Part shown: in pieces, positions 2,321 to 64,000 of the stretch
How positions within the stretch are numbered: the stretch's first letter is position 1
How the letters are laid out: each line of letters starts with the position of its first letter
Source of the DNA: Iphione sp. A-MEVVRFRX5
Lineage: Eukaryota
Reading direction: 5' to 3'
Length of the DNA: 64,000 nt
Assembly: GCA_976226885.1 (NCBI GenBank)
Contig: OZ320313.1
Span: forward strand, 106,206,001 to 106,270,000
Translations under genes and position numbers: made by a program
The notes under the pieces: generated by a model
Database searches by the model: none
What the model was told of the DNA's origin: nothing
What the model saw: the letters and a program-made list of their open reading frames with translations, nothing else

Positions 2321-2888
2321 CAGGAGAACCCCACCATGCGACCAGTCGCCTAGGGTGACCAGTCGGCCAGTGCGACCAGTTTTACTAAGAACGAACCAAA
2401 TTTCAGTACATTGTCTATGTGGGAGACTCCGCCCATGGCGACCACTGGCTTGGGTGACCATTCGCCCATTAAGACCACTATTTTCAGAACCAAAGTCATG
2501 ATTTCAAGGTGTGTTGGGCGACCACTTGCCCACATACCCAATAAACACTACTTTCAACCATAATATTCAGTTAATTTAGACTTCTTTTCCCATAAGATTC
2601 AGTTAATTTGGACTTTTTCCCCATTAGATTTAGTTAATTTGGACTTTTCCCCCCATAAGATTCAGTTAACTTGGACTTTTTCCCCATAAGATTCAGTTAA
2701 TTTGGACTGTTTCCCCATAATATTCAGTTAATTTGGACTTCTTTTCCCCATAATATTCCCCATAGAGAAGGAGACAGAGAGATGGACATAGAGAGAGAGG
2801 GAGACACCCAATGCCTTAGGCGACCAGTCGCCTAATGCAACCACTTCAGCTCAGTCCCTTAGGTGGTCGCTTTAGGCGGAGTCTCCTG
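2321..2888. mobile_element. Tc1/mariner-pogo-type MITE with internal ~32-bp minisatellite
   Basis: TA|CAGGAGAACCCC ... GGAGTCTCCTG|TA, repeated GCGACCAGTCGCCTA subterminal motifs, and about 6 copies of CCATAAGATTCAGTTAATTTGGACTTTTCCC at ~2558-2765. Confidence 0.8.
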
Positions 2889-10369: not shown

Positions 10370-11236
10370 CAGTCGGACATCTCGATTACGGACACCCTTG
10401 GTTCTACTTCAAATCGTCCGCATTTCAGAAGTGTCCTGATTATAGATCACTTAGTACATTAGTAGCATATGACAAGTGTGTTTGTGAAGTGCTGAATTTG
10501 ACGAGTAAGAGTCAAAAAAAGTGCTGAATTTGACAAGTAAGAGTCCTAAAAGTACTGAATTTGATGAGTTTGAGTCACATAAGTGCAGAATTTGACGAGT
10601 AAGAATCAAAAAAGTGCTGAATTTGACGAGTAAGGGTCAAAAAAGTGCTGACTTCAAGGTGTGAGGGACATCAGAGAGGTCACTGTTTATGCCCTCTGTC
10701 TCCCCCAACCACTCTTTCAATTGTTAACAGAGGTGTGATGTGCATCAGAGAGGTGATCATTGACACCCCTTGCAGGTATAGACCGCTAATTGGCAGGTTT
10801 AGACCGCAAACTGGGGGGTTTAGACTGTGAATAGGTCGGTTTAGACTGATTTCAAGGTGTGAATTCGCATTTCAAGGTGTGAATTCACACAAAAACATGT
10901 ACAGGGGCTTGATACCCTACCCTTTGCGGGTGTCCACAGGGAGACGCTCCTCTAAAATGGGTGTCCTGATTAGGGAGGTTCTCTTACAATGCTTTACTAT
11001 AGGAAACACTTTGGTTCTCCTCCAAATTGTCCACATTTGGGACGTGTCCGCATCCCAGACGTGTCTGCGAGGGGATGTCCTACTGTACTGTCCCTATTGG
11101 AGACTTTTCCTTATGGGAAACGTGTCCCTAAGGTGGCTTTCTTCTAGGTGTTGTGCCACACTAGATTGGAGACACCCCCTAAATGCAGACACTTTCACTG
11201 GGAACCAAGGGTGTCATCATTTCCAAGGTTCTACGG
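10370..11236. mobile_element. Tc1/mariner-pogo-type MITE with internal 31-bp minisatellite
   Basis: TA-flanked, with ~75-bp imperfect TIRs sharing GACACCCTTGGTTC...GTC(C/T)GCATTT...GTGTC. Confidence 0.7.
10488..10652. repeat. 31-bp tandem repeat, ~5.3 copies
   Basis: Unit AAGTGCTGAATTTGACGAGTAAGAGTCAAAA, head-to-tail with no spacers. Confidence 0.95.
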
Positions 11237-39460: not shown

Positions 39461-40094
39461 AATACATATCTATCTATATAACACTAATTCAGTGAAGCTT
39501 TACCACAAAAGAACATTATTTTCATCGGGGCACTGTAGTAGATCAGTGACTGGCCAAGCGTTTATATTATGTGGGCAGCAAGAAAGCAAAAAAGTAGAGT
39601 GAGTCAAGTAGAACTGATCATTACAACAAAAAAAGCCGTGAAGCTGCTTTTCCTCAATGCTGGACAACACTTAGATGCGCTCATTGAACATAGCAGCTAT
39701 GGGCTGGTCTGACATACACCCCTGACCCCCCAAGATTAAATCCGCCCCCCCCACCTCATACCCCTGTGGCATTCCTGCCGCGCCTCGACATGTTGCCCAG
39801 TACGTAGCTACGTATCAGGAGCCGGTTTATATTTGTGGCGTGGCGACATCTATCAACATACGTCGGCAAAGAAACCCGTTCAAGAGACTGGCGGAGCGTA
39901 GAGGACGGCGGTCGGCAGATGGTTCTCGGGAGCACGGGAAGTACGGCAGGTCGGAGTTCGGAGGACACCGGGGGAAGCTCGGAGAAAGGCCCTAGGACAT
40001 GTCTGTCTGGGCTCAATATAGTGACGTGTAACAATCTGTTTTCTGTTTTCTCCTCTTCACTCTTAACATCCCGAGTCCTACCTTTATCCCCCAT

Positions 40095-40274
40095 NNNNNN
40101 NNNNNNNNNNNNNNNNNNNNNNNNNNNNNNNNNNNNNNNNNNNNNNNNNNNNNNNNNNNNNNNNNNNNNNNNNNNNNNNNNNNNNNNNNNNNNNNNNNNN
40201 NNNNNNNNNNNNNNNNNNNNNNNNNNNNNNNNNNNNNNNNNNNNNNNNNNNNNNNNNNNNNNNNNNNNNNNNNN
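40095..40274. other. Assembly gap (180 N)
   Basis: Run of N. Confidence 1.
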
Positions 40275-41544
40275 ACCTATCTACCGGCCTATATATCAAT
40301 CTATCTTATTATTTATGTTTCTCTATATCTATCTAAACCCCCCCCCCTCCTCATTGGACTGATCCAAGGGAGCAGGAAGATGGCCCGAAAGGACATTAAA
40401 ATATGAACCCTATAACCCCGCCACGACCACCTTTCTCCTTTATTCTCGCCCGCATGTCATCTGGCCTTCCACTGTAGTCTTCATTCTTGACCATAGAATA
40501 AAGAAGTATAATAGCAATCCATCCCACCAATATTATACTTTGTAGTGTTTGTAGTTACATTACCTGTTGAAAATGTTGCTTGGAAGGATGAAAATTGATC
40601 AATACTGTCTGTGTTGAAAAGTTTATGATTGAAAAGAAACACGTTTAACTAAACGAAAAATCACTCACTGGCCAGAACTGGTGTAAGTACCAAAGGCACT
40701 TATGTATATACATAAATAGTGCGCTGATCACACTCCAGTGAAATAGAAATTTATACATATGATTTTTTATACGAGCCTATAGTATTACTTTTATCGTAGC
40801 TTTGAGCTGCATCGTTTTGCCTATTGTGTGACCTGTACACTTGATTTCATTTGATTTGATCTTTATTTATACTTCTCATGTATAATATTATAGAGTTCTT
40901 CCAGTGAAAAAACAGTTACAAAAACGTTGGTACTCTTAATCATGTTTCCAAGTGCTGGGACAAAGGCAACGTATTGCCTGGAGTGATACATATTTATTTG
41001 TTTAGACATTAGCACCGCTTCTTGTGGGCAGCTCAACTAGCAGGGCAACCCAGAATTAAGGGCAAGTTTAGTTGGTCCGAATACTGTATTAATATACATA
41101 TGCAATAAACAATTGGCAATTAATCTCTTTCATTTTCTATGTCTATATATGCTACTTTTGCAAAGTGTAACTTCTACCAAAGGCACGCCATGATGTCAAT
41201 ATTCTTCGCACTTACCGTTAACTTATTAGAATCATTCAAGTTTTCTGGGACTGTAGCATTAACTTGAATATAAAGATTCACTTTTAGTCATGGTATCAAA
41301 CGTCCAATTACATTTTTCTGTTTCTGTCTAATAGGTCTTTTTCCTACTTTTTAATGACGTTAAGTGTTGACAAATACCTGTACAAGGTATCGTTATAAGA
41401 GGTTGCGATTTAATCAAAGGAGGGAGAGCAATCTATAATAGAAAGCAGGACCATCCCCCGACCCAAGTAGCACAGCTCGAGTGCACGTCGTGGTATATCA
41501 GCCACCACCATGGGGAGAGTACACCAGCAGAACTTGCAGTGTTA

Positions 41545-42327: not shown

Positions 42328-42510
42328 TTGAAACATATTTTAGGATAGACCTTCAAGCCTATATTTTCAGATGATGATAGAATAGGTCTTGTTACATCAT
42401 AGAATCACTAGAATTAATTTGAAACATATTTTAGGATAGACCTTAGAGCCTATATTTTCAGAAGATGATAGAATAGGTCTTGTAGAATGGAATCACTAAA
42501 ATTAATTTCG
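42328..42510. repeat. 91-bp tandem duplication (2 copies)
   Basis: TTGAAACATATTTTAGGATAGACCTT...GATGATAGAATAGGTCTTGT starts at both 42328 and 42419. Confidence 0.9.
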
Positions 42511-42559: not shown

Positions 42560-43136
42560 GGCCTGGTTTCCTTGTGTATGGATTTTGTGCCCAGACCACG
42601 GACTGCATGGTCCAGAGAAAAATGGTCTCACTGATTTTAACAGAGGGTGTTCCATATGAACGGGTGCGTGGTCCATGGTCCATGGTCTGGAGCCTGAAAA
42701 CGGACAATGCTCATTTTTTTCCGCACCACGCATGCACACGGAGGAGTAGAATAGAGAGATGGCGGGTTTCAGCAGGAGAAACACTGTGTTACATGTGTTA
42801 GATGTTGTGAATTATTTGTAATTTGCATATCATTTGCATACAAACTGTACAATTTTTACCAATATGCCTCAATCTCCACGAAAAACTGCACAATTTTTGC
42901 CGATATGCCTCAATCTCCATGAAAAACTGCACTATTTCCACCAATATGCCTCAATCTCCATGAAAAAAATAAATACATGTACATACATTACAGTACATCT
43001 CTCTTTCTCTCTCTATCTCTCTGGAAAAAAATCTGTACACAAAGAAACTGGGTGTATGTGGATGTGCGGAAAACAGCTCATTTTCCGGACTTCACATGCA
43101 GTGCGGAAAATTCTACATGCACATGGGTACCGGGCC
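42560..43136. mobile_element. PIF/Harbinger-type MITE
   Basis: Ends GGCCTGGTTTCC / GGTACCGGGCC with TAA TSD. The internal ~41-bp repeat TATGCCTCAATCTCCATGAAAAACTGCAC (x3) resembles the internal repeat of the 5327 copy. Confidence 0.7.
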
Positions 43137-54109: not shown

Positions 54110-57100
54110 TCAGCACTTGGACGACTGTAGTGATGTAAGTTGAGGGCCCGACCCCCGAACGTTCGTGCTAGCCTCCCCGGGGCCAGAGTGGTAGGGGTCC
54201 CGGGGGGGTGGGCCCCCAAAGGCCTTCTGTCCAGGTGCTGGACGGTAGGGGGGAGGTGGATTGCCGCTGCTCGCCGATGGGTAAGACAGTCCTGGCTGCC
54301 CGCCTATCTTGGATCCGCCGCCTGCACCGTTGAAATCCACCGCACTGCCGTAATTCTGCGAGGTCTCCACATAAGGTCTGCGCTTGTAGTTGTCGACTGA
54401 GTCACGAGAGGTCGCCGTGGAGCCGCTGCTAGCCCCACTGTACGTGGGGTAGCGGTCCCTGGGCGCATGTTGAGCAGGTGGTGGTGGTGGCTCGTGTTGT
54501 CTGTGGTTGGCGGTGTATGTTGTTTGTGGGCTAGGCCTGTAGAAGTCCGGCTGGGGCTGGGCACGCCCAGCCTGTTCAACATAACCATGTTGCCGGTTAG
54601 CAACGGCTGCAGCTTCTTGAGCACCTGGTCTACCTGCAGCTTTGTCGTATCCTGTGGTTGGCATGCTAGCAGGACCAGGGACCTGCCCCGGCTTTCCGTG
54701 GGTGAGCGGCCGGGCGGGTGACGAGTTGCTCTTCGGCAAACCATTTCCAACTGGCCTGTATCCAAACTGACCATGATGACCTCCTCCCGAGTCCTGGCTG
54801 CCCGCCCTATACGGTGCTGCACCTGGATCCGTTGGTCTCCGAGCAGATAACCCTTGATTACTGGCACCCTGACTGGCCAAGCTAGGGTTCGTAGGATCAC
54901 GACTGACTTGGTTTTGGATGGCCGCCGGGTGCTTAGCCAACCCTTGGCTTTGCAGTGCCTGACTAACAGATCCGTGACTGTTCGACCAATAACCCTCTGT
55001 TTCATGACTAACTGGTTTGTGACTGGGTGGCCCATAGACTGTAGGCTGATTAATTCCTGCTGATCCAGTAATTGGCCCTTGTCCCACGGGCCCGTTCATA
55101 GTGGATCTATATCCGGACGGCCCGTATCCTGCTGGACTTTGATGGCTGGCTGGAGGCTGGCTGGGGGTATAATCCCGGGCTGACCTCTGTGGGTCAGCTG
55201 GACCAGTCATGGCTCCAGGGTATGACTGGTTGCTGGGAATGACCCCTGACGGTAACGTGGTCTGCAGTGGACGATTGTAGCCTTGCACCTGTTGTCGACT
55301 GTAGAGGGCGTGGTTGTAGGGCGGGGGTCGGCTGTGGCTGGTGTACTGGGGCTGGACGGCTGGGTAGCCACCGCTGCTGAACGAAGACGACTGACTGTGA
55401 ACCGAACCGCTGGACACCGGGGAATGACTGTGCCTCGAACTGGCCTGGCGGGCCGCCATGTCAGAGAACCACTTCAGGTTTTCATAGACAGGGGAGTCAA
55501 GATCCCCCCGTAGTGGCGGGCGGGGCGGCCCGACCCCGGCAGATGGGGAGTTGGGCAGCAGGTTGATGGTGCTGCTGCCGCTACTATGGACATCACTCTC
55601 GCTGGTGTACCCTAGCTGGTCGGGCCCACTGATCAGCTCGATAGTGTTTGCTGTACTAAAAGTGTTCTGAATGTAGCTCCGGGCTGTGGTACTGCTGTAC
55701 TTACTCCCAGCGGAGCTACTGTTGGGAGCAGGCACCACGGAGTCTGGAGAGAGCGAGCCGCAGTAAGGCATGGCTTGGACATAGCCCCGGCCACCAATAC
55801 CCAGCCCGTCTAGGTAGGCGGCCGAGGCCGACGGAGGCAGGTCATAGGTGCGTACAGGACGCGTACTTGTGGTCGTGGTCGTGGACACTACATGCCCCGA
55901 GCCATCATAGAGGCTTGAACGTTGACTGGACACCTCGCTAGATGGCGACTCGAGCACAGCAGACATCTCGGAGTCCGACGACTTGGAGTCGTACCAACAA
56001 CCTCCTCCATTCCCACTACTTGTCTGTCCTCCTCCCCCTCCTGTGCTTCCTGCCCCGGCGGATCCGATGGCTGAGTGAAGCAGGTGGTCTACCTGGCTGG
56101 ATGCTGCTCCCCCCGGGAGCCGCGGGCCGGGGTATGGAGGAGGTGGTTTGTAGGGCTCCTGGGGCTCTCCACTGCTATTGACGTACCTGTAGAAGCCCCC
56201 CGGGTGGCCATTAGCCCTGCTCGCGGAGTCTTCAGTCCGTCCGCGGGCTGGAGACCCAGCCTGATATGATGAACCGGCACCAGGGGTCGCCACCTGTCTT
56301 GGCGGAGGTTGGTTCACCCTAGAGGCACCAGGGGGCGACACTGCTGGATGTGGCTCCTCTTTGGGTCTGTCTTGAAGTAATCCTCCGGGACTACTGTGGG
56401 CCTGAACTGACGAGGTTTTGGGTAGGGCCGATAATGAGGTGGCTTTACTGGGCAGACCTGTGCTCACCAACTGTTTGGCGTTGACAGGCTCACTCTGAGC
56501 GCTCATGGAATAGTGCATGAGGCTGGATAAAGATTGCGTCGTGCGTACCACCTTGGCTGGCACTTGCTGTGGTAGGACAGATGGACCTGCGACAGTCCCT
56601 GCGTTATCCACAGTAGAGGAACCCACCACTTTGGCCGGTAGACCGGCTGCTGAAGCCGAAGTAGCTCTACGAGCCAGATTGTCAGGCAACGAGTAGACGG
56701 CCACAGAGGAGTCCAGGCTGTTGTCAGCCGCGGAATGCTCCGGATCGGGCGTTGGTGCCGATTCCTCAATAATATCACTGAATTTGACCGATTTGGACTT
56801 AGCCAGAGGAGCCACTGCCTTAGAGCAGCCCTCTGTGTCCCCATCCTTCACCTCCTCTTTTTGTTCGGGGGCTTGCTCCCGTACCTTACCAGAGTTGACA
56901 TCAATCCCTCCAGCGGTTTCTTGTTGTGGGCCGATTGTTGACCCACCAGGGGGCGATGACTCAGCAGGTTGTTGGGTGGTGGAGGGTTTCGACAATGCTG
57001 TGTGTTGTAAAGGTTTAGGCGGAGGAGTTGGCTTCTTGTTGCCTCCTTGTGAACCTGGCTTGACACTGGGAGCCACGCATCCCACAGGTTTGTTCGCTGA

Positions 57101-58099
57101 AGCAGGTGTACTGCTTGACGTCGTGTGAGAACTGCTGCTACCCAGAGGGCTGGGCACCAGTGGGGCATTCGCCGACAAACCAGTCATCTCCCCCTTACTT
57201 ATTGTGTGACTCGGCGTTTGCAGGTTGGGAGACTGTGCATTGGTGGTTGCGGGGTCGGTTGGTGGTGCCTTAAGGTCGGCGGTTTCCGGTTCCTGCCCGC
57301 CGGCCTGCACCACCGACAGACGCTGCATATGCTCCAGTGCCATCCGTTCTTGCCGGGTCTCGGCCAGAACCTTGCGCGCCAGCACTGTCGGGTCTAAAAG
57401 CATGGCTGGACCCTCCGCGTCGGCGCCTTCCGTTGTTATCGCCATCGTCGCGACCGTTCCTGACGATGTCTTCACCGTGTCGGCCGCATCGAGCTCGTCG
57501 TCGGCGCTCCACAGCCCGTCCTGACTGGGGCCGTAACCGTCATCAATGACGGCCGTTTTATTCCGAGTGGCAGTTTTCGGTCCTGTTTCCCTATTGTCGG
57601 CACCACCACTGGCACCGGAAGTCCCAGCGGCAGGTGTGTCCAAGGAGTATTGTTCTGCGTCCCCAGTCAGTGTCCGGTCGCTCGCCGAACTGCGCGTCGA
57701 TGTCAACGAGCTACGGCCGCGCGTGCGCCGGAAGGCACCACTACCACCGCCACTTCCTGTGCTTTTCAATGTCACTGTACTACTCGAGGACAGCACGGAG
57801 CTTCGTGCTGCCGACGACCGCGTCAGCGTACCGCCGCCGCCCACGTCGCTATCGTCGCTGTCGCTTGCCGACGTGCTGTAGCCGGCCGGCGGCGGCGGCG
57901 GCGGGAGTTGCTCGCGATGATGTGAGGAGCGGTCGGTAGATGGGAGGTCGGCGCGCGCGGTCTGGTCGTCGGAGGGCGCGGTGTCGTTATCTTCACTGGT
58001 GGAGCTCGGACTGCTGTACTTGGCGCGGATCATGTTCTGGTGCGTGAGATGGAGAGAGATGTTAGGCCCCTGAGCCCGCGAGCCTCGGCCTTTACCGCC
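54110..58099 (-). CDS. TTC28: TTC28 terminal exon, ~1329 aa, low-complexity/disordered, ends ...LQSSKC-stop
   Basis: Acceptor TTTTTTCTGTGTGTTTTCCACAG|GGC in phase 0, matching the upstream donor. The ORF is open for 4 kb. It contains LDPTVLARKVLAETRQERMALEHMQRLS, similar to vertebrate LDPQELAQKILEETQSHLIAVERLQRS, and the C-terminal SSKC that I recall in human TTC28. Confidence 0.9.
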   Translation of the reverse strand, partial: GGKGRGSRAQGPNISLHLTHQNMIRAKYSSPSSTSEDNDTAPSDDQTARADLPSTDRSSHHREQLPPPPPPAGYSTSASDSDDSDVGGGGTLTRSSAARSSVLSSSSTVTLKSTGSGGGSGAFRRTRGRSSLTSTRSSASDRTLTGDAEQYSLDTPAAGTSGASGGADNRETGPKTATRNKTAVIDDGYGPSQDGLWSADDELDAADTVKTSSGTVATMAITTEGADAEGPAMLLDPTVLARKVLAETRQERMALEHMQRLSVVQAGGQEPETADLKAPPTDPATTNAQSPNLQTPSHTISKGEMTGLSANAPLVPSPLGSSSSHTTSSSTPASANKPVGCVAPSVKPGSQGGNKKPTPPPKPLQHTALSKPSTTQQPAESSPPGGSTIGPQQETAGGIDVNSGKVREQAPEQKEEVKDGDTEGCSKAVAPLAKSKSVKFSDIIEESAPTPDPEHSAADNSLDSSVAVYSLPDNLARRATSASAAGLPAKVVGSSTVDNAGTVAGPSVLPQQVPAKVVRTTQSLSSLMHYSMSAQSEPVNAKQLVSTGLPSKATSLSALPKTSSVQAHSSPGGLLQDRPKEEPHPAVSPPGASRVNQPPPRQVATPGAGSSYQAGSPARGRTEDSASRANGHPGGFYRYVNSSGEPQEPYKPPPPYPGPRLPGGAASSQVDHLLHSAIGSAGAGSTGGGGGQTSSGNGGGCWYDSKSSDSEMSAVLESPSSEVSSQRSSLYDGSGHVVSTTTTTSTRPVRTYDLPPSASAAYLDGLGIGGRGYVQAMPYCGSLSPDSVVPAPNSSSAGSKYSSTTARSYIQNTFSTANTIELISGPDQLGYTSESDVHSSGSSTINLLPNSPSAGVGPPRPPLRGDLDSPVYENLKWFSDMAARQASSRHSHSPVSSGSVHSQSSSFSSGGYPAVQPQYTSHSRPPPYNHALYSRQQVQGYNRPLQTTLPSGVIPSNQSYPGAMTGPADPQRSARDYTPSQPPASHQSPAGYGPSGYRSTMNGPVGQGPITGSAGINQPTVYGPPSHKPVSHETEGYWSNSHGSVSQALQSQGLAKHPAAIQNQVSRDPTNPSLASQGASNQGLSARRPTDPGAAPYRAGSQDSGGGHHGQFGYRPVGNGLPKSNSSPARPLTHGKPGQVPGPASMPTTGYDKAAGRPGAQEAAAVANRQHGYVEQAGRAQPQPDFYRPSPQTTYTANHRQHEPPPPPAQHAPRDRYPTYSGASSGSTATSRDSVDNYKRRPYVETSQNYGSAVDFNGAGGGSKIGGQPGLSYPSASSGNPPPPYRPAPGQKAFGGPPPRDPYHSGPGEASTNVRGSGPQLTSLQSSKC

Positions 58100-59195
58100 C
58101 TGTGGAAAACACACAGAAAAAAAAACCTCCGCTTTCTAAATAGTGGCTCCCTACATGTTTCAAATGCACGATTTAATGATTATAGATACCTTTTTATGCG
58201 TGATTTTCGCAGTTAGTCTAATAACATAAATCGTGTTAAATCTAAAATACAAGTTGTCTTTAAGAAAAGAGAACAAATTCAAACTATAAATTAAGTACAT
58301 GCATGTGACAGTAGCTTGTGAACATAACATTTAAAAAAACCGTTTCCCTGGGTGAAATATACCTGTCTAACATATAAATTATTCTCAAATAAACAGACCA
58401 CTAGTGAGACAAAAAGTTCTTGACAGAGGGGATAGCAAAGAGAAAGTCTACACTAAAATACCACGGAATGCATGATTATCTGTATATAACAGCTGTAGTT
58501 GTCAGATCAAGAGTCTTCGTTGAATGGATGGGTGAAACCAAGCAGTGAAAGGATAAAGAATTCGAGAGGCAAATTATAATGAAAAACAATAGAAAACTGA
58601 CGGATAGGTATCCGAAATGCACAAAGGGGAACAATTGAGATCAACTACGTTTTAGTATTGAAATCGGTGACAAAGCAAAATAATTTGAATTAGTTCTTTG
58701 CAAAGTCCAAAAGCAAATGTGATCTTTTAGAGTGAAAAAAGCGAATTACAACAAGAATAAGCTTTTGAAAGGTGTTATGAAACACTGCCATTTTAAATCT
58801 TCTTGATTGCAAATTGATAATAAAACCGACTACGGCAATTGTGGCAGGACTCAAATCTACCTTTTTCGTACAATTTTACCGCAATTCTATTGTTTTTTTA
58901 ACAGCGAGATATCTATACAACAAGATTCTCAGAAAACGCCACCTGGTGCGCTGGCAGTCAGCAATCCACCCCAACACCTGCAATTATGTGCTGACGATGG
59001 CAAAATTATTTTTGTTTACAGATCTCGGTCACTCTTGCCTATGGAGCTCTAGGGCCCTTGCCCCTCCTCCTGCTCCTCCTCCTGCTGCAGAAGGAGGTAG
59101 AAGTAGAAGCTCGAGGCTGGTGGACCTTATTGAATGTTGCTGTTATGATCAGATGGTCATACGTGGCCTACGTGCACTACCTGAGCATGGTTCAC

Positions 59196-59389
59196 CTTAG
59201 CGGCGGACGGCAGCTTGTCCACCTCGGCCGGATTAAAGAACGATTTCCGCCGGCCCGCCGTCGTCGGCGAGCCGGGCGGCGAGCTGCCCTTGGAGAAGTT
59301 GGAGGTGGAGGTGGCCGACCCGCTGGAGCAGAGGCTCTCCATGGAGCTGGAGGAGTCGAGGCACAGCGTACGCGGCGCCTCCTGGGTGT
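59196..59389 (-). CDS. TTC28: TTC28 internal exon (194 nt, phase 1 to 0)
   Basis: Acceptor GGTTCCCTCACAG|AC. Translation (D)TQEAPRTLCLDSSSSMESLCSS...DKLPSAAK resembles vertebrate LPKRLSLDSSSSLESL. Donor AAG|GTGAAC; alternative in-phase donors lie just downstream (e.g. CAG|GTAGTG at 59180), so the exact 3' end is less certain. Confidence 0.85.
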
Positions 59390-59725
59390 CTGTGAGGGAA
59401 CCAAACATTTAGCATAGGTATTACTTCGAAGTTGGTGAAGAATGACACCAAACCCTCAACAGCCATGTTACAGCACCTCATATATATCAAATATTATATA
59501 TTGTTCTCGACTTTTACCTATATCATAAAACAGATATTCAATGCATTACACTTCGATCTGAGACAGAGCCTTCATTAAACTCTGATTCGACTTTGGTGTC
59601 TTTACATTTCACTTTCCCTAACATCATTACCAATTCGGAGGACTATCCCAAGAAATAATCCAATGAATCCAATAAAGTCTAAAGTAATGTGCCTGTACTT
59701 AATATCTACGTATGGGTACTCTTAC

Positions 59726-59833
59726 CGAAAATAGCAACAAGCGCTTGGAGAGCAAACTGCATCGTCCGTCGGTTAGCCTGTTTACCAGCCTTAATCTTTA
59801 CTTCGTCCTTCCCGACATCGATAAGATCAAAGC
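59726..59833 (-). CDS. TTC28: TTC28 internal exon (108 nt, phase 1 to 1); absent from the ORF track
   Basis: Acceptor GTTATTCCCTTAG|GC, donor TTC G|GTAAGA. Translation (G)FDLIDVGKDEVKIKAGKQANRRTMQFALQALVAIF resembles vertebrate FDLCEVGQEEVILKTGKQANRRTVHFALQSLLSLF (from memory). Confidence 0.93.
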
Positions 59834-60079
59834 CTAAGGGAATAACAAACATGATACATAAAAATAATGTTGTACTGGCTGTACAGCTAAAATTTCAATA
59901 TACTGACTTTTCTCTGGACGGTGTTTTGAACCGTGCTGATTGCGACAACCACTGCAACTCTGTCAGTATGGGGAGCTTTCCTTAGTCAAACGAGCTGCTC
60001 AGTATAAAGTGTTACACTATTACCCCCGTAGCAGGCTAAACACCTAGAGCTTGTCTATACGTTGATAAGAATTACCTAC

Positions 60080-60262
60080 CTAGCGAGGCGAGGAACTCGT
60101 GACAGCCAGGAGCCCGCCACAGTTTGACACTGATGGGGACAACAACATTTGCGTCTTGGCTGAACTGGGCGTTCACCTCCCGGACAAGCCCAGCCACTGC
60201 CTCACCCACCTCCTGGTGGTTAAGCAGCTTCGAGAGAGCTGTCAATGTTGGTACTGCCAGGC
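60080..60262 (-). CDS. TTC28: TTC28 internal exon (183 nt, phase 1 to 1)
   Basis: Acceptor TTTCTATCATTTCAG|GC, donor CTA G|GTAGGT. Translation (G)LAVPTLTALSKLLNHQEVGE...VPISVKLWRAPGCHEFLASLG resembles vertebrate TTC28 (...SISVQLWRLPGCHEFLAALG, from memory). Confidence 0.92.
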
Positions 60263-60960
60263 CTGAAATGATAGAAACGTAAAGGTACGTTGAGAGAGCT
60301 GACAGTGTGGGTACTGCTGGGCCACTAACAATAGACCTGTAAAAATAAATTGAGAGAGCTGTAAATGTGGGCATTGTCAAAGCTGTAACAATATATAAGT
60401 AATTGCACATCAAGAGAGCTGTCAACGTGACGGAGCCAGGCCTGGAATGGTAGGCATGTATGCTTTTTGTTTTTTTGTTTTTAGACATGTAAAGGTATAT
60501 TGAGAGAGCTGAAATTGTGGGTATTGTCAATCCTGCTGCAATAGAAGTGAAAAATTACACCGGGAGAGCTGATGGATCTTAACAGGCCTGCGACAGTACA
60601 CATAGAACAGAACATCAAGAGAGCAGTCAATGGAGGCATTGCAGGCCTGCAGCAACAGACAAATCACTGTACATTGAGAGGACTGATGATGTGGGCATGG
60701 CCAGACCTCTACCAACAGTCGTGTAAAGGTACACTGAAAGAGTTACCAATGTGGGCACTGCCAGGCCTCTGACAATAGACATGTAAAGGGGCACTGAGAA
60801 CTGATAATGTGGGTATTGCCAGGCCTGCAGCAATAGATGTGTACAGGTATGTTTAGAGGACTGACAATGTGGCCACTGCCAGGCCATTAACAACAGAAAC
60901 ATCAAGGTATAGGGAGGAAACTGTCCATATGGGCATTACCAGGCCAGCAGATTGTAGGCC
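60232..60960. repeat. ~60-bp minisatellite (~12 diverged copies) spanning the TTC28 intron/exon junction
   Basis: The GAGAGCT-like landmark recurs at about 60240, 60300, 60360, 60420, 60510, 60570, 60625, 60684, 60744, 60802, 60862 and 60922. The first unit contains the real acceptor and the first ~30 exon nt. Confidence 0.9.
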
Positions 60961-61431
60961 TGGAGTACTAGTTGTAAATGAATATGGAATGGATAAGTAT
61001 ACAAGAATGTTTCCTTCGTCCTCTTGCGTAGCGTAAAGGAGTAGATATTCGCTTAGTAATGGACAGTTGAACCTTCTGATTGGCACTTTGACAGGCACTT
61101 TGACAGTTATTTTTCTTATCCTTTGTCAGATTTTATGTAATTAAATGATACTAAGTGGGCGGAATGAGAGTACGAAAGACAAGAAAATAGTAGCTAAGGG
61201 ATGATCGTAAATGAGTATCTTAACATTATAAATTATACGATGTCTGTGGGAGAAAATCAGAAATAAAGATGGTGACGAATACCACCAATGCTCATAGAGA
61301 TGAGTGGGTGGAGCAAATTACGATTACACGGAGAGAAGAATGTCAATATGTCAACTGTCAACAATTACAAGGACACTGTAACAAGTAAATTAACAGGTGG
61401 GGAATTTGACAGACATGATGGACACTTTGCT

Positions 61432-61438
61432 GAGAGAG

Positions 61439-61519
<81 letters not shown>
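61432..61519. repeat. (GA)n microsatellite in a TTC28 intron
   Basis: Read directly from the sequence. Confidence 0.95.
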
Positions 61520-61520
<1 letters not shown>

Positions 61521-62814
61521 GAAAAGAAAAGGTTGCTGAGGGAGAACAGGCGGGATCGAGAGGGAAAACAGCAAACTCCAAGAACATAAGCGATTTCTAA
61601 ACTATGTCACGGGGTACTTCCCTGCAAGATTGTGTAAAGTGCGTCACCGAGTAATGACGCACATTCCAGAAATTCGTTCTGGCTATTTTTCGGTTAAAGT
61701 TACCGACGGCAATCTATTATTGCTCAACAATATCAAAAAGCATGACACACGTCGCCATTTTTCTTGCATTTCTGGTGTCTGCAGTAATTCTGACATTCGT
61801 TTATTCATGCACTGTAGCACATAACAACTACCAAAAACTACTGAAAACTACATGTACTTGTATCGCCACAAATCAAACTGTAACTTTTGACAGTTAAATA
61901 TTTGACATTGAAATATGTTGTGAAAAATACTACAATTACGCAAAACTGGAAAGTATAAGATGCACTGAAATATAAAATATACTTAAATGCAAAAGGGTCT
62001 AAATATGATAACAGCATTCATAATATGGACTAGAATCTGAATTTGTTAAATAGGGATTACACTAATGGTCAAGTAGAAGAGGAGACGTTGGAATAAAACA
62101 CGCATATGTTAAAAATAAAGTATGGTGCATGAAAGTAGTTTTACGAGAAACCACCATACAACCAACGTTCTGTTTCATAGCTGAAATATAACTTCCTATA
62201 AGGTGGTTTGGCTAGGCTGGGTGGGTGGGGGTCTCTCACTATGTCCACCTGGTGGACAAGGCATACATTAAAATCAAGCTTACTGGTAGATAGTTCCATC
62301 TAAAGAATGCGACCCTAATTTGACCTTACGTTACGTGAGAGGATAGAATCACAAGGTCAAGACGGAGGGTCAGATAGTCAGACAGCGGTAATCCTGAGGT
62401 TTCCCTGACGGAGGAGACAAATAGGATTTACTTCAGCAGAAAATCATTCTTACTGCTAAATACTTCCAACTAAAAACGTGCCACTCTATTAACTAAATAC
62501 ATACATGAATATACTACATGTTGCATACACTTATTTCCTCAGTAAGCATGTACAGTCAAACCCCCTTTAGCAGGAATCTTAAACAAGGAATTCTTTCCAT
62601 ATCTGGATGAGTTTCCAAGCTACAAACTCTCAACTGTCTGTACGTTCAAGTCTATTTTATCCGGATTTCTCTTTATCTGGATGAAACAAGAAACCTAGAG
62701 TCCGCATAAATGAATGTAATCCTGGTTGCAATCAATTAATGTATTCTGTACAAGAAACTGTCATGCCCAAATCAATAATCATGGACTAATACTAAGCTAT
62801 AGAAGAGACCTTAC

Positions 62815-64000
62815 CTAGCAGGGCTTGTAGACTGGCGCTGCACTGAGTGAGTCGGTCGCCAGGGTCAGAGGTCGGGAAGAAGACGCCAGCCGGGATGCCG
62901 TTGGCAGCCGCCTCAAAGCGGAAGCCTACGGAGGAGAGCAGGTCCTGCCAGCCTGCCACGTCCCCCACTTTGTTCTCTATACTCATCTGCGTGGTGTACA
63001 TGGCGTTCCGCTGCCCCTGGTGAATGCGCTGGAGGGACTTCTCCACCAGGTGGAGCACCACCCTCATAGCCTCCCTGGAGCGGGCTGGTTGCTGAAGCAG
63101 CTGACAGAGGGCGTGACCCATCAAGGCCACCTTACTGGAGAGCTTCACATCGCTGCCCACCAGCACCCAGCTGGCCCAGTTGGCAGGGTGGGCGAACTGC
63201 CGGGTGCCCTGCACGGCCCGCATGGCGTCGGCAAGGGCGCGGCTGGCGGTGAGACCTCGCAGGAGGCCGGTGTAGAAGGCTTTCAGGAGGCCCCTGGAGG
63301 CCTGCTCCGGGACGGGCCACAAGGAGAAGAGCACGGACTGAGCGCCGGCCGCCAGCAGGGCGCGGGTCACCCCCACCACGCCGTCCGAGTTGATGCGACC
63401 GGCGCGGTCGTCGCTATGTCCAGAGCTCAGCACCACCAGGCGGGCCCCTATCCGCATGTTGAGGACGTCGGCCGCGGTCAGCAGGAAGTCGGCTAGCGGC
63501 GGTCCGTCGTCCAGGCCTCCACTAACGCTACCGCCTCCCGCGCCGTCGTTCAGTTCCATCCGCTCCAGGCGACCACCCTGCCCTCCTGAGGCCCCGCCTC
63601 CACCGGTCGTAGTGGTGGTGGTGGAAGGAGAGGAAAACTCACCAGGGGAAAGTACAATGGCAGCTAGCTTCCAGGATACGTGCGTACTCATGTGGAGCAC
63701 CTCGGCGCGCGGCGCCATACGTACCACATTCTCCTTAGACGCCTGCAGCCCGCTCAGCGGCTTGGCTCCTAGAATCTCCCCCAAGATGCGGCATTCCTGG
63801 TCGGCGGCCGGCAGGGGGCTCCACTGCCACTGTTCGTGCACACACGCGGGCAGCTTGGGGTTGCTCACCAATACGGAGCCCGAGCAGTCCGGGTCGTACC
63901 GACTGGGCGTCTGCTCGCGAGCCTGGCCAGCCTGCAGACTGCGGATAGAGGGCGCCACGATCAGATTGAAGCGTTCGTAGAGGCACTGGGCGCCCTGCGT
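62815..64000 (-). CDS. TTC28: TTC28 (TPR repeat protein 28 / TPRBK) exon encoding the CHAT (caspase-HetF-like) domain; open frame continues beyond the window edge
   Basis: The frame is open from 64000 (TQGAQCLYERFNLIVAPSIRSL...). It contains the CHAT motifs AEVLHMSTHVSWKLAAIVLSP, LVVLSSGHS and FAHPANWASWVLVG, followed by LVEKSLQRIHQGQRNAMYTTQMSIENKVG...VFFPTSDPGDRLTQCSASLQALLG, which I recognise as the TTC28 post-CHAT region. Phase-1 donor CTA G|GTAAGG, intron starting at 62814. Confidence 0.95.

What the first reader, a model, noticed from the sequence alone, without database searches (positions are those of the whole stretch)
60232..60960. Minisatellite made of a duplicated splice acceptor: a tandem array of alternative or decoy 3' splice sites in TTC28
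Seen: the ~60-bp unit equals about 30 nt of intron end plus the first ~30 nt of the exon (minus strand ...CATTTCAG|GCCTGGCAGTACCAACATTGACAGCTCTCTC), repeated ~12 times upstream into the intron. About 8 of the 11 extra copies keep an AG at the homologous position (e.g. TTGTTACAG|CT at 60382, CCATTCCAG|GC at ~60441, TATTGCTGCAG|GC at ~60823). The unit is 20 codons long. The 60382 acceptor lies exactly 120 nt upstream in a stop-free frame and would insert 40 mostly hydrophobic residues (ALTMPTFTALSIYFYRSIVSGPAVPTLSALSTYLYVSIISG...) next to the CHAT region. The next copy has a 1-nt deletion and gives an immediate stop (a poison acceptor). Known (from memory, to be verified): exon-edge-derived 'mirage' minisatellites were reported in amphioxus Adh introns. 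Inference: a copy-number-variable splice-site array that could tune isoform length or NMD. The spliceosome must bypass many upstream AG decoys to reach the true distal site, which conflicts with simple first-AG scanning unless the branch point is also unit-specific.
Basis: partly seen in the sequence, partly recalled or inferred. Interest (0 to 1): 0.7.

Follow-up and report, generated by a model that had tools for sequence, protein, structure and literature searches.

The report
Old minisatellite copying a splice acceptor
An intron of a TTC28-like gene holds about a dozen decayed tandem copies of the gene's own intron-end-plus-exon-start, a repeat type already known from amphioxus ("mirage" minisatellites); nothing here shows the extra splice sites are used.

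Summary
On the minus strand, 60232-60975 is a tandem array of about 12 units of 60 nt. Each unit is 29 nt of intron end (branch-point-like TTTAC, pyrimidine tract, AG) plus the first 31 nt of the exon. The array's 3' end is the real acceptor, with first exon base 60262.

That acceptor sits at exactly the same codon and phase in two other animal genomes. Their introns are 215 and 584 nt and hold no repeat. In 19 of 20 junction-spanning homologues the junction reads straight through.

Eight of the 11 extra copies keep AG. Two would add in-frame peptides (+40 and +90 aa) and six run into a stop.

The units are only 57% alike on average and 73% at best. The real unit is closest to the consensus, and the AG retention fits neutral decay. 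The unit occurs nowhere else in the 1.18-Gb genome.

This is a "mirage" minisatellite, as in amphioxus Adh3, globin, TnC and PGBD5, and the acceptor-side counterpart of the human F7 IVS7 VNTR. It is old and lineage-specific. It is unlikely to be copy-number-variable now.

No RNA run was listed, so use of the decoy sites is untested. The scan had already noted the same kind of repeat at other loci of this genome.

The parts
62815..64000 (-). Upstream coding exon (end of the CHAT domain plus the first PUB-like module). The last exon base is 62815, phase 1. The exon runs past the window end.
   Evidence: Pfam CHAT E=1.5e-40 on the ORF 62792-63958. The sequence reads ...CTG CTA G|gtaagg. The Atlas nearest cluster is 'tetratricopeptide repeat protein 28-like'.
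62813..62814 (-). GT of the donor site of the intron that holds the array.
   Evidence: Read directly. The donor is at the same codon position in L006 and L007.
60263..62814 (-). Intron of 2552 nt. The orthologous introns are 215 nt (L006) and 584 nt (L007).
   Evidence: No Rfam family matches in 59000-63000.
60232..60975 (-). Mirage-type minisatellite of about 12 units of 60 nt (56-60 nt, one of 90 nt with an insertion). The last, partial unit is the first 31 nt of the exon.
   Evidence: It is unique to this locus in the genome.
60263..60264 (-). AG of the authentic acceptor (tttcag|GC CTG GCA). The pyrimidine fraction is 0.75 and there is no other AG for 34 nt upstream.
   Evidence: The AG aligns with the acceptors of L006 and L007. 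The junction is conserved in 19 of 20 homologues.
60279..60283 (-). Branch-point-like TTTAC inside the last unit, with its A 17 nt before the acceptor. The same motif is kept in the units at 60766, 60706 and 60322.
   Evidence: That it acts as the branch point is inferred, not shown.
60080..60262 (-). Real exon of 183 nt, phase 1-1, encoding (G)LAVPTLTALSKLLNHQ...GCHEFLASL(G). It is part of the TTC28_C region.
   Evidence: Homologues P0001-P0006 carry precomputed PF26117 TTC28_C. Nucleotide alignment.
60383..60384 (-). AG of a decoy acceptor (gttacag|CT). If used it adds 120 nt, or 40 aa, in frame with no stop.
60533..60534 (-). AG of a decoy acceptor (tgcagcag|GA). If used it adds 270 nt, or 90 aa, in frame with no stop.
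60442..60443 (-). AG of a decoy acceptor (attccag|GC). The unit has a 1-nt deletion and the reading stops after 6 codons.
60588..60826 (-). Five further decoy AGs, with first exon bases at 60587, 60646, 60706, 60766 and 60824. All meet a stop codon if used. Those at 60706 and 60766 are in a poor gAG context.
60323..60324 (-). Homologous position of the nearest upstream copy, where AG has become TG. AG is also lost in the copies at 60884 and 60944.
60453..60482 (-). A 30-nt insertion inside one unit, including the A-rich run 60464-60482. It splits the array into the two blocks that Tandem Repeats Finder reports.
59196..59389 (-). Next coding exon (194 nt, phase 1 to 0).
   Evidence: Sequence and ORF frame. 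The relative L007 has a TTC28_C-positive ORF at the matching place.
54110..58099 (-). Large last coding exon, a low-complexity tail of about 1330 aa, with the stop codon at 54110-54112.
   Evidence: These two downstream exon junctions mean that a stop inside an extended exon would be premature.

Best explanation
This is an old, decaying 'mirage' minisatellite. A 60-nt segment straddling the 3' splice site of one exon of a TTC28-like gene was duplicated in tandem. The segment was 29 nt of intron, holding a branch-point-like motif, a pyrimidine tract and the AG, plus the first 31 nt of the exon. It expanded to about 12 units. Because a copy of the junction always stays joined to the rest of the exon, the duplication leaves the mRNA unchanged as long as the 3'-most acceptor is used. 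The other copies become intron sequence. They have since drifted as pseudo-acceptors: three lost the AG, two have a poor gAG, and six of the eight with AG would give a premature stop. The real site is recognised through its own in-unit branch point and pyrimidine tract and its nearness to the rest of the exon and its donor (exon definition). Any occasional use of a decoy would mostly be removed by nonsense-mediated decay. What is shown: the anatomy, the direction of copying (exon edge into intron), lineage specificity, the old age, and uniqueness in the genome. What is inferred: the duplication mechanism, exclusive use of the distal site, and neutrality.
For: The array and its unit structure are shown. 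The exon-like part encodes (G)LAVPTLTALS, which is conserved in homologues from distant animals, so the exon edge is ancestral and the intron copies derive from it. The acceptor is at the same aligned column and phase in L006 and L007, whose introns are 215 and 584 nt with no tandem repeat. In 19 of 20 junction-spanning homologues SLQALL|GL..L.ALSK reads without an insert. Mean pairwise unit identity is 0.57, the maximum is 0.73, and adjacent units are no more alike than non-adjacent ones (0.573 against 0.567). The real unit is closest to the majority consensus (0.85 against 0.50-0.82), as expected if only it is under selection. Units lie 15-25% from the consensus. Third codon positions of the exon differ by 46-59% from the two relatives, so the array is younger than those splits. 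AG retention of 8/11 compares with 5-7 expected. The real site has the best signals: Y fraction 0.75, cAG, TTTAC at -17, and a 34-nt AG-free zone. The unit is found nowhere else in 1.18 Gb. For precedent, amphioxus mirages do not disturb regular splicing although many units keep AG/GT (PMC3087553, PMC3902484). The human F7 IVS7 pseudo-donors are functional yet silent (PMC1557585).
Against: There is no RNA evidence for this species, so exclusive use of the distal site is only inferred. The exon-like half of the units is better conserved than the intron-like half (top-base frequency 0.82 against 0.69; pairwise identity 0.63 against 0.50). I cannot explain this; it may partly reflect anchoring the units on that half. 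Differences by codon position (0.26/0.16/0.31, chi-square p=0.059) lean weakly towards a coding-like pattern. That lean is inflated by one shared CCC/CCA difference that most likely arose in the exon copy. The nearest AG-bearing decoy is a good cAG site and is open in frame, and so is a second one.
Confidence: 0.75

Rival explanations
1. Some decoys are genuine alternative acceptors. The 60382 and/or 60532 sites would give isoforms with 40 or 90 extra, mostly hydrophobic residues inside the TTC28_C region. The stop-containing sites would give NMD-coupled down-regulation.
For: Six decoys have a cAG with pyrimidine fraction 0.62-0.75, and two are open in frame. The frame stays open for 152 codons. 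The exon-like halves are somewhat better conserved than the intron-like halves. In a low-confidence model (pLDDT 64) the junction falls in a 3-residue turn between two helices, where an insert is less disruptive than inside a helix.
Against: No homologue has a real insert at this junction. The array is absent in two relatives. The word search with the 152-aa open frame found no protein containing array-encoded residues. Open frames in 2 of 8 copies, and 8 of 11 AGs, are what drift gives. The literature on mirages reports no aberrant mRNAs.
Confidence: 0.13
2. The array acts as an intronic splicing regulator without being spliced to. It would be a sink for U2AF, U2 or SR proteins, with the exon-like halves carrying exonic enhancer motifs. 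This would slow or modulate recognition of the true acceptor.
For: There are twelve copies of branch-point, pyrimidine-tract and exon-edge motifs within 740 nt. The exon-like halves are better conserved.
Against: There is no conservation outside this lineage. The units are heavily diverged. Nothing tests binding.
Confidence: 0.07
3. The direction is reversed: a pre-existing intronic minisatellite was partly exonised, so the exon edge derives from the repeat.
For: The exon start and the repeat share 31 nt.
Against: The 10 residues encoded by those 31 nt are conserved in homologues whose introns lack any repeat, and in lineages with no intron at that place.
Confidence: 0.02
4. The array is an assembly artefact, a falsely expanded tandem duplication.
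For: None specific. The amphioxus draft genome mis-assembled one mirage (PMC3087553).
Against: All units differ from one another by at least 27%, so no collapse or expansion of identical copies is involved. The contig is 179 Mb long in an 89-contig assembly.
Confidence: 0.02

Closest known systems
'Mirage' minisatellites of amphioxus (Adh3, globin BflGb6/BflGb9, troponin C, PGBD5)
   Same: Tandem repeats whose unit spans an intron-exon boundary. The authentic junction lies at the end of the array. Many but not all units keep AG/GT. Unit lengths are 10-160 bp, and PGBD5 has 60- and 108-bp units (PMC3087553, PMC3902484).
   Different: Here the units are far more diverged (57% mean, 73% at most) than in BflGb6 (81-100%). 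This looks like a fossil array rather than an unstable one. The host genome is 1.18 Gb and unnamed, and earlier scan notes call it a worm, so it is probably not amphioxus; I did not verify that. Splicing and length polymorphism are untested here.
Human F7 intron 7 37-bp VNTR spanning the exon 7 donor site
   Same: A minisatellite whose first unit straddles a splice junction, giving a row of pseudo-splice-sites that stay silent while the authentic site next to the exon is used (PMC1557585).
   Different: In F7 the donor side is copied, the pseudo-sites are identical in sequence and the array is polymorphic. Here the acceptor side is copied, the copies are diverged, and the chosen site is the most downstream one.
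Intron gain or splice-site creation by tandem genomic duplication (Rogers model; potato RdRp case, PMC4974935, title and abstract only)
   Same: A tandem duplication that includes AG/GT signals creates extra splice sites.
   Different: No new intron arose here. The intron position is old and shared with two relatives. The duplication only lengthened an existing intron.
NAGNAG and other tandem alternative acceptors
   Same: Several in-phase AGs upstream of one exon.
   Different: NAGNAG sites are 3 nt apart and share one branch point (from general knowledge). Here the sites are 60 nt apart and each has its own branch-point-like motif and pyrimidine tract.

Membership tests
Mirage minisatellite (tandem duplication of an intron-exon boundary) | Head-to-tail tandem array with a minisatellite-size unit | tested here: met
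   A 60-nt period with about 12 units.
Mirage minisatellite (tandem duplication of an intron-exon boundary) | The unit contains both intron end and exon edge, and the array abuts the real junction | tested here: met
   The unit is 29 nt of intron plus 31 nt of exon, and the homology stops 31 nt into the exon. The real junction is fixed by orthology.
Mirage minisatellite (tandem duplication of an intron-exon boundary) | Many but not all units keep the splice dinucleotide | tested here: met
   8 of 11 upstream units keep AG.
Mirage minisatellite (tandem duplication of an intron-exon boundary) | Regular splicing is not disturbed; the decoys are silent | not testable with these tools
   No RNA run was listed for this stretch, so read laying could not be used.
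Mirage minisatellite (tandem duplication of an intron-exon boundary) | Length instability or polymorphism between haplotypes | not testable with these tools
   No reads and no second haplotype: there is only one locus in the assembly. Unit identity of 73% at most argues that instability is now low.
TTC28-like protein (host gene) | N-terminal TPR repeats, a CHAT domain and a TTC28_C region in that order | tested here: met
   TPR_12 E=1.9e-103 on the 813-aa ORF upstream of the window (L012). CHAT E=1.5e-40. PF26117 TTC28_C is precomputed on homologues of the exon. The local Pfam copy gave no TTC28_C hit on the 63-aa exon itself.
NAGNAG tandem acceptor | Alternative AGs 3 nt apart | tested here: not met
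   The spacing is 56-90 nt.
Dispersed repeat or transposon-derived satellite | Copies of the unit at other loci of the genome | tested here: not met
   Only this locus matches by BLAST and by a degenerate pattern with up to 3 mismatches in 1.18 Gb.

The most novel reading that the evidence does not exclude
At least one decoy, most plausibly the cAG at 60383-60384 (+40 aa, in frame), is used in some tissue. A neutral junction duplication would then have given a lineage-specific TTC28 isoform with a hydrophobic insert between the two PUB-like modules, or an NMD switch. Combined with earlier, unverified scan notes of many such arrays in this genome, that would make junction-copying minisatellites a recurrent source of new alternative splice sites in this animal.
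Probability: 0.1. Interest if true: 0.55.

Novelty: new member of a known kind. Interest (0 to 1): 0.22.

Why it matters
The structure adds little on its own. It is one more splice-junction-copying minisatellite, a class described in amphioxus and, on the donor side, in human F7. Three things give it some value. It is a clean acceptor-side case in which orthologues fix the true site and show the direction of copying. It shows what such an array looks like long after expansion stopped, with decoys decaying at the neutral rate. It is a natural test set for 3' splice-site choice: six reasonable cAG decoys, each with its own branch-point-like motif, lie upstream of the chosen site. If the earlier notes of many such arrays in this genome hold, the genome-wide excess is the interesting question, not this locus.

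Tried and rejected
- **RNA evidence:** The look-up of sequencing runs (kind rna) on 59000-63960 listed no run. Read laying was therefore never called, and decoy usage stays open.
- **Dispersed-repeat idea:** rejected.
- **ncRNA in the intron:** no Rfam match at E<=0.1.
- **Exonised-satellite idea:** rejected by orthologues.
- **Coding constraint on the copies:** the codon-position test is marginal (p=0.059) and confounded by shared ancestry and by one change in the exon copy. I do not count it as support.
- **Taxon:** searches for the accession numbers of the relatives in papers found nothing, and the Atlas gave only 'TTC28-like'.
- **Other junction arrays in this gene:** I looked from the window to about 26 kb upstream (loci L012-L019). 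Tandem Repeats Finder shows no second array at an evident exon edge, but exon edges there were not mapped in detail.
- **Structure model:** the model of junction-spanning homologue P0003 is low confidence (pLDDT 64) and I use it only as a hint.
- The big representative search was not run, because the word search settled the protein's identity. The N run near 40.1-40.3 kb was left alone.

Full report
**What is there**

Read on the minus strand, 60975 down to 60232 is a head-to-tail array with a 60-nt period. Tandem Repeats Finder reports two blocks, 60232-60371 and 60635-60897, with 70-75% matches. The repeat finder lists up to seven in-register copies at 60-nt spacing.

Cutting the sequence at the conserved core gives units whose first 'exon-like' base is 60944, 60884, 60824, 60766, 60706, 60646, 60587, 60532, 60441, 60382, 60322 and 60262. 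A profile built from the eight best units also recovers the degenerate ones. It finds nothing else in the 64-kb window. One unit (60532) carries a 30-nt A-rich insertion, which is why Tandem Repeats Finder splits the array.

Each unit has two halves. The first is about 29 nt that looks like an intron end, with consensus AATGTACCTTTACATTTCTATTGTTACAG. The second is 31 nt, GCCTGGCA.T.CCCACATTG.CAGCTCTCTC. In the last unit those 31 nt are the start of a coding exon, and the homology ends exactly there.

**The gene and the true acceptor**

The host gene is on the minus strand and is TTC28-like.
- Upstream of the window lies an 813-aa ORF full of TPR repeats (TPR_12 E=1.9e-103).
- A CHAT exon ends at 62815 (CHAT E=1.5e-40).
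- The 183-nt exon 60262-60080 follows. Its homologues carry the precomputed family PF26117 TTC28_C.
- A 194-nt exon (59389-59196) comes next, then a last exon of about 4 kb (58099-54110).

The donor reads CTA G|gtaagg and the acceptor tttcag|GC CTG GCA, both in phase 1.

Two other animal genomes have an intron at exactly this codon and phase: L006, a Logan assembly, and L007, an ENA assembly. Their acceptors align to the same column. Their introns are 215 and 584 nt and contain no tandem repeat, against 2552 nt here.

In 19 of 20 homologues that span the junction in one reading frame, SLQALL is followed directly by G/A-L-x-x-x-[ST]-L-x-A-[LI]-[SA]-K. The one exception is a read-through of a short intron at the same place.

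So the acceptor at 60264-60263 is the ancestral one. The ten residues encoded by the repeated 31 nt are old coding sequence. The array was therefore copied from the exon edge into the intron, not the reverse.

**The decoys**

At the position homologous to the true AG, 8 of 11 upstream copies keep AG.

| First exon base | Dinucleotide and context | If used |
|---|---|---|
| 60944 | TG | no acceptor |
| 60884 | TG | no acceptor |
| 60824 | cAG | stop |
| 60766 | gAG (poor) | stop |
| 60706 | gAG (poor) | stop |
| 60646 | cAG | stop after 6 codons |
| 60587 | cAG | stop |
| 60532 | cAG | +270 nt, +90 aa, open (reader missed this) |
| 60441 | cAG | stop after 6 codons (1-nt deletion) |
| 60322 | TG (nearest copy) | no acceptor |

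Two exon junctions lie downstream, so those stops would be premature.

The true site has the best signals. It has a pyrimidine fraction of 0.75, a cAG, a TTTAC with its A 17 nt before the AG, and no other AG for 34 nt upstream. Any branch point further upstream would meet the AG at 60300-60299 first, so the branch point for the true site has to lie inside the last unit. This step is inference; no lariat data exist.

**Age and selection**

Mean pairwise identity of the units is 0.57. The best pair reaches 0.73. Neighbours are no more alike than distant units (0.573 against 0.567). The true unit is the one closest to the majority consensus, at 0.85 against 0.50-0.82 for the others. This is the pattern expected if all copies drift and only the real junction is held by selection.

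Units are 15-25% from the consensus. Third codon positions of the exon differ by 46-59% from the two relatives. The expansion is therefore younger than those splits, which fits its absence there, but it is still old.

With per-site retention of 0.69-0.82, 5-7 of 11 AGs should survive by chance. Eight do, and the probability of eight or more is 0.09-0.49.

Differences between the exon-like halves and the exon fall at codon positions 1/2/3 at rates 0.26/0.16/0.31 (p=0.059). Nearly all copies share CCC where the exon has CCA, which is most simply one synonymous change in the exon. Without it the third-position excess disappears.

One thing I cannot explain is that the exon-like half is better conserved than the intron-like half (0.82 against 0.69). 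Anchoring the units on that half may contribute.

At 73% identity or less between units, slippage or unequal exchange is unlikely today.

**Uniqueness and artefact**

BLAST of the array against the whole 1.18-Gb assembly finds only itself. A degenerate 31-nt unit pattern with up to 3 mismatches hits four times, all inside the array, with zero hits for the reversed control. It is therefore not a dispersed element. Because all units differ, a false tandem expansion by the assembler is very unlikely. No Rfam family matches the intron.

**Comparison with what is known**

Tandem repeats that span an exon-intron boundary were named 'mirages' in amphioxus Adh3. They are also reported in amphioxus globin, troponin C and PGBD5 genes. 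Units are 10-160 bp, many but not all keep AG/GT, regular splicing is undisturbed, and length instability has been seen (PMC3087553; PMC3902484).

The human F7 gene has a 37-bp VNTR whose first unit spans the exon 7 donor. Its pseudo-donors are functional but silent (PMC1557585).

The present array meets the structural criteria of a mirage. The two behavioural criteria, silent decoys and length instability, could not be tested. It differs from the amphioxus cases in being much more decayed. Earlier notes of this scan call it a worm, and I did not verify that.

**Earlier notes of the scan**

Look-ups by place and by words returned several reports of the same kind of junction-copying arrays at other loci of this genome. 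Follow-up agents also filed them as mirages. I did not test those loci. In the roughly 36 kb of this gene that I inspected, from 54 to 90 kb in extended coordinates, this is the only array at a recognisable exon edge.

**What could not be done**

No RNA run was listed for this stretch, so read laying was not used and decoy usage is open. A structure model of the junction-spanning homologue P0003 has low confidence (pLDDT 64). It places the junction in a 3-residue turn between two helices, which I treat only as a hint.

**Verdict**

The structural interpretation is supported. The functional interpretation is unsupported and somewhat disfavoured. This is a new member of a known kind, and its interest is low to moderate.

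Noticed in passing
window 61432-61518 (minus strand reads CT): A (CT)43 tract lies in the same intron. It is a very long polypyrimidine run in the pre-mRNA, followed within 20 nt by ...ttctctctcag|CAAAG. That makes it a strong-looking cryptic acceptor about 1.17 kb upstream of the true one.
   Followed up: no
window 62816-63169 and 60081-60263, minus strand: The end of the CHAT exon (...VLHLVEKSLQRI...IENKVGDVAGWQDLLSSVGF) aligns with the next exon (...VAGLVREVNAQF...ISVKLWRAPGCHEFLASLG). This suggests two tandem PUB-like modules, an old internal duplication inside TTC28_C. Some homologues carry precomputed PF09409 PUB hits, and P0003 gives a weak local PUB hit.
   Followed up: partly
L008:1666-2178 (NCBI GCA_022702835.1) and P0021: In P0003's genome the junction is read in one ORF, so there is no intron at this position. 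P0021 reads through a short intron of about 57 nt at the same place. The intron is therefore present in some lineages and absent in others.
   Followed up: partly
G000:C1 about 106311000-106318000 (L014, L016; 41-48 kb beyond the window end): A series of near-identical minus-strand ORFs of 74-83 aa (...SITCVIWSVAFWSKSRPSMCNSFRVMTVFLFTHL...) recurs every few hundred bases. This looks like a large tandem satellite upstream of the region inspected.
   Followed up: no
window about 40090-40300: There is a run of N, an assembly gap or masked stretch, seen as X in ORF translations. I left it untouched.
   Followed up: no
window 2558-2758, 10487-10651, 42328-42508, 42842-42967: Other minisatellites with 31-, 41- and 91-nt units and 82-90% matches lie downstream of the gene's 3' end. 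They are much better preserved than the array studied. I did not check them against any exon edge.
   Followed up: no
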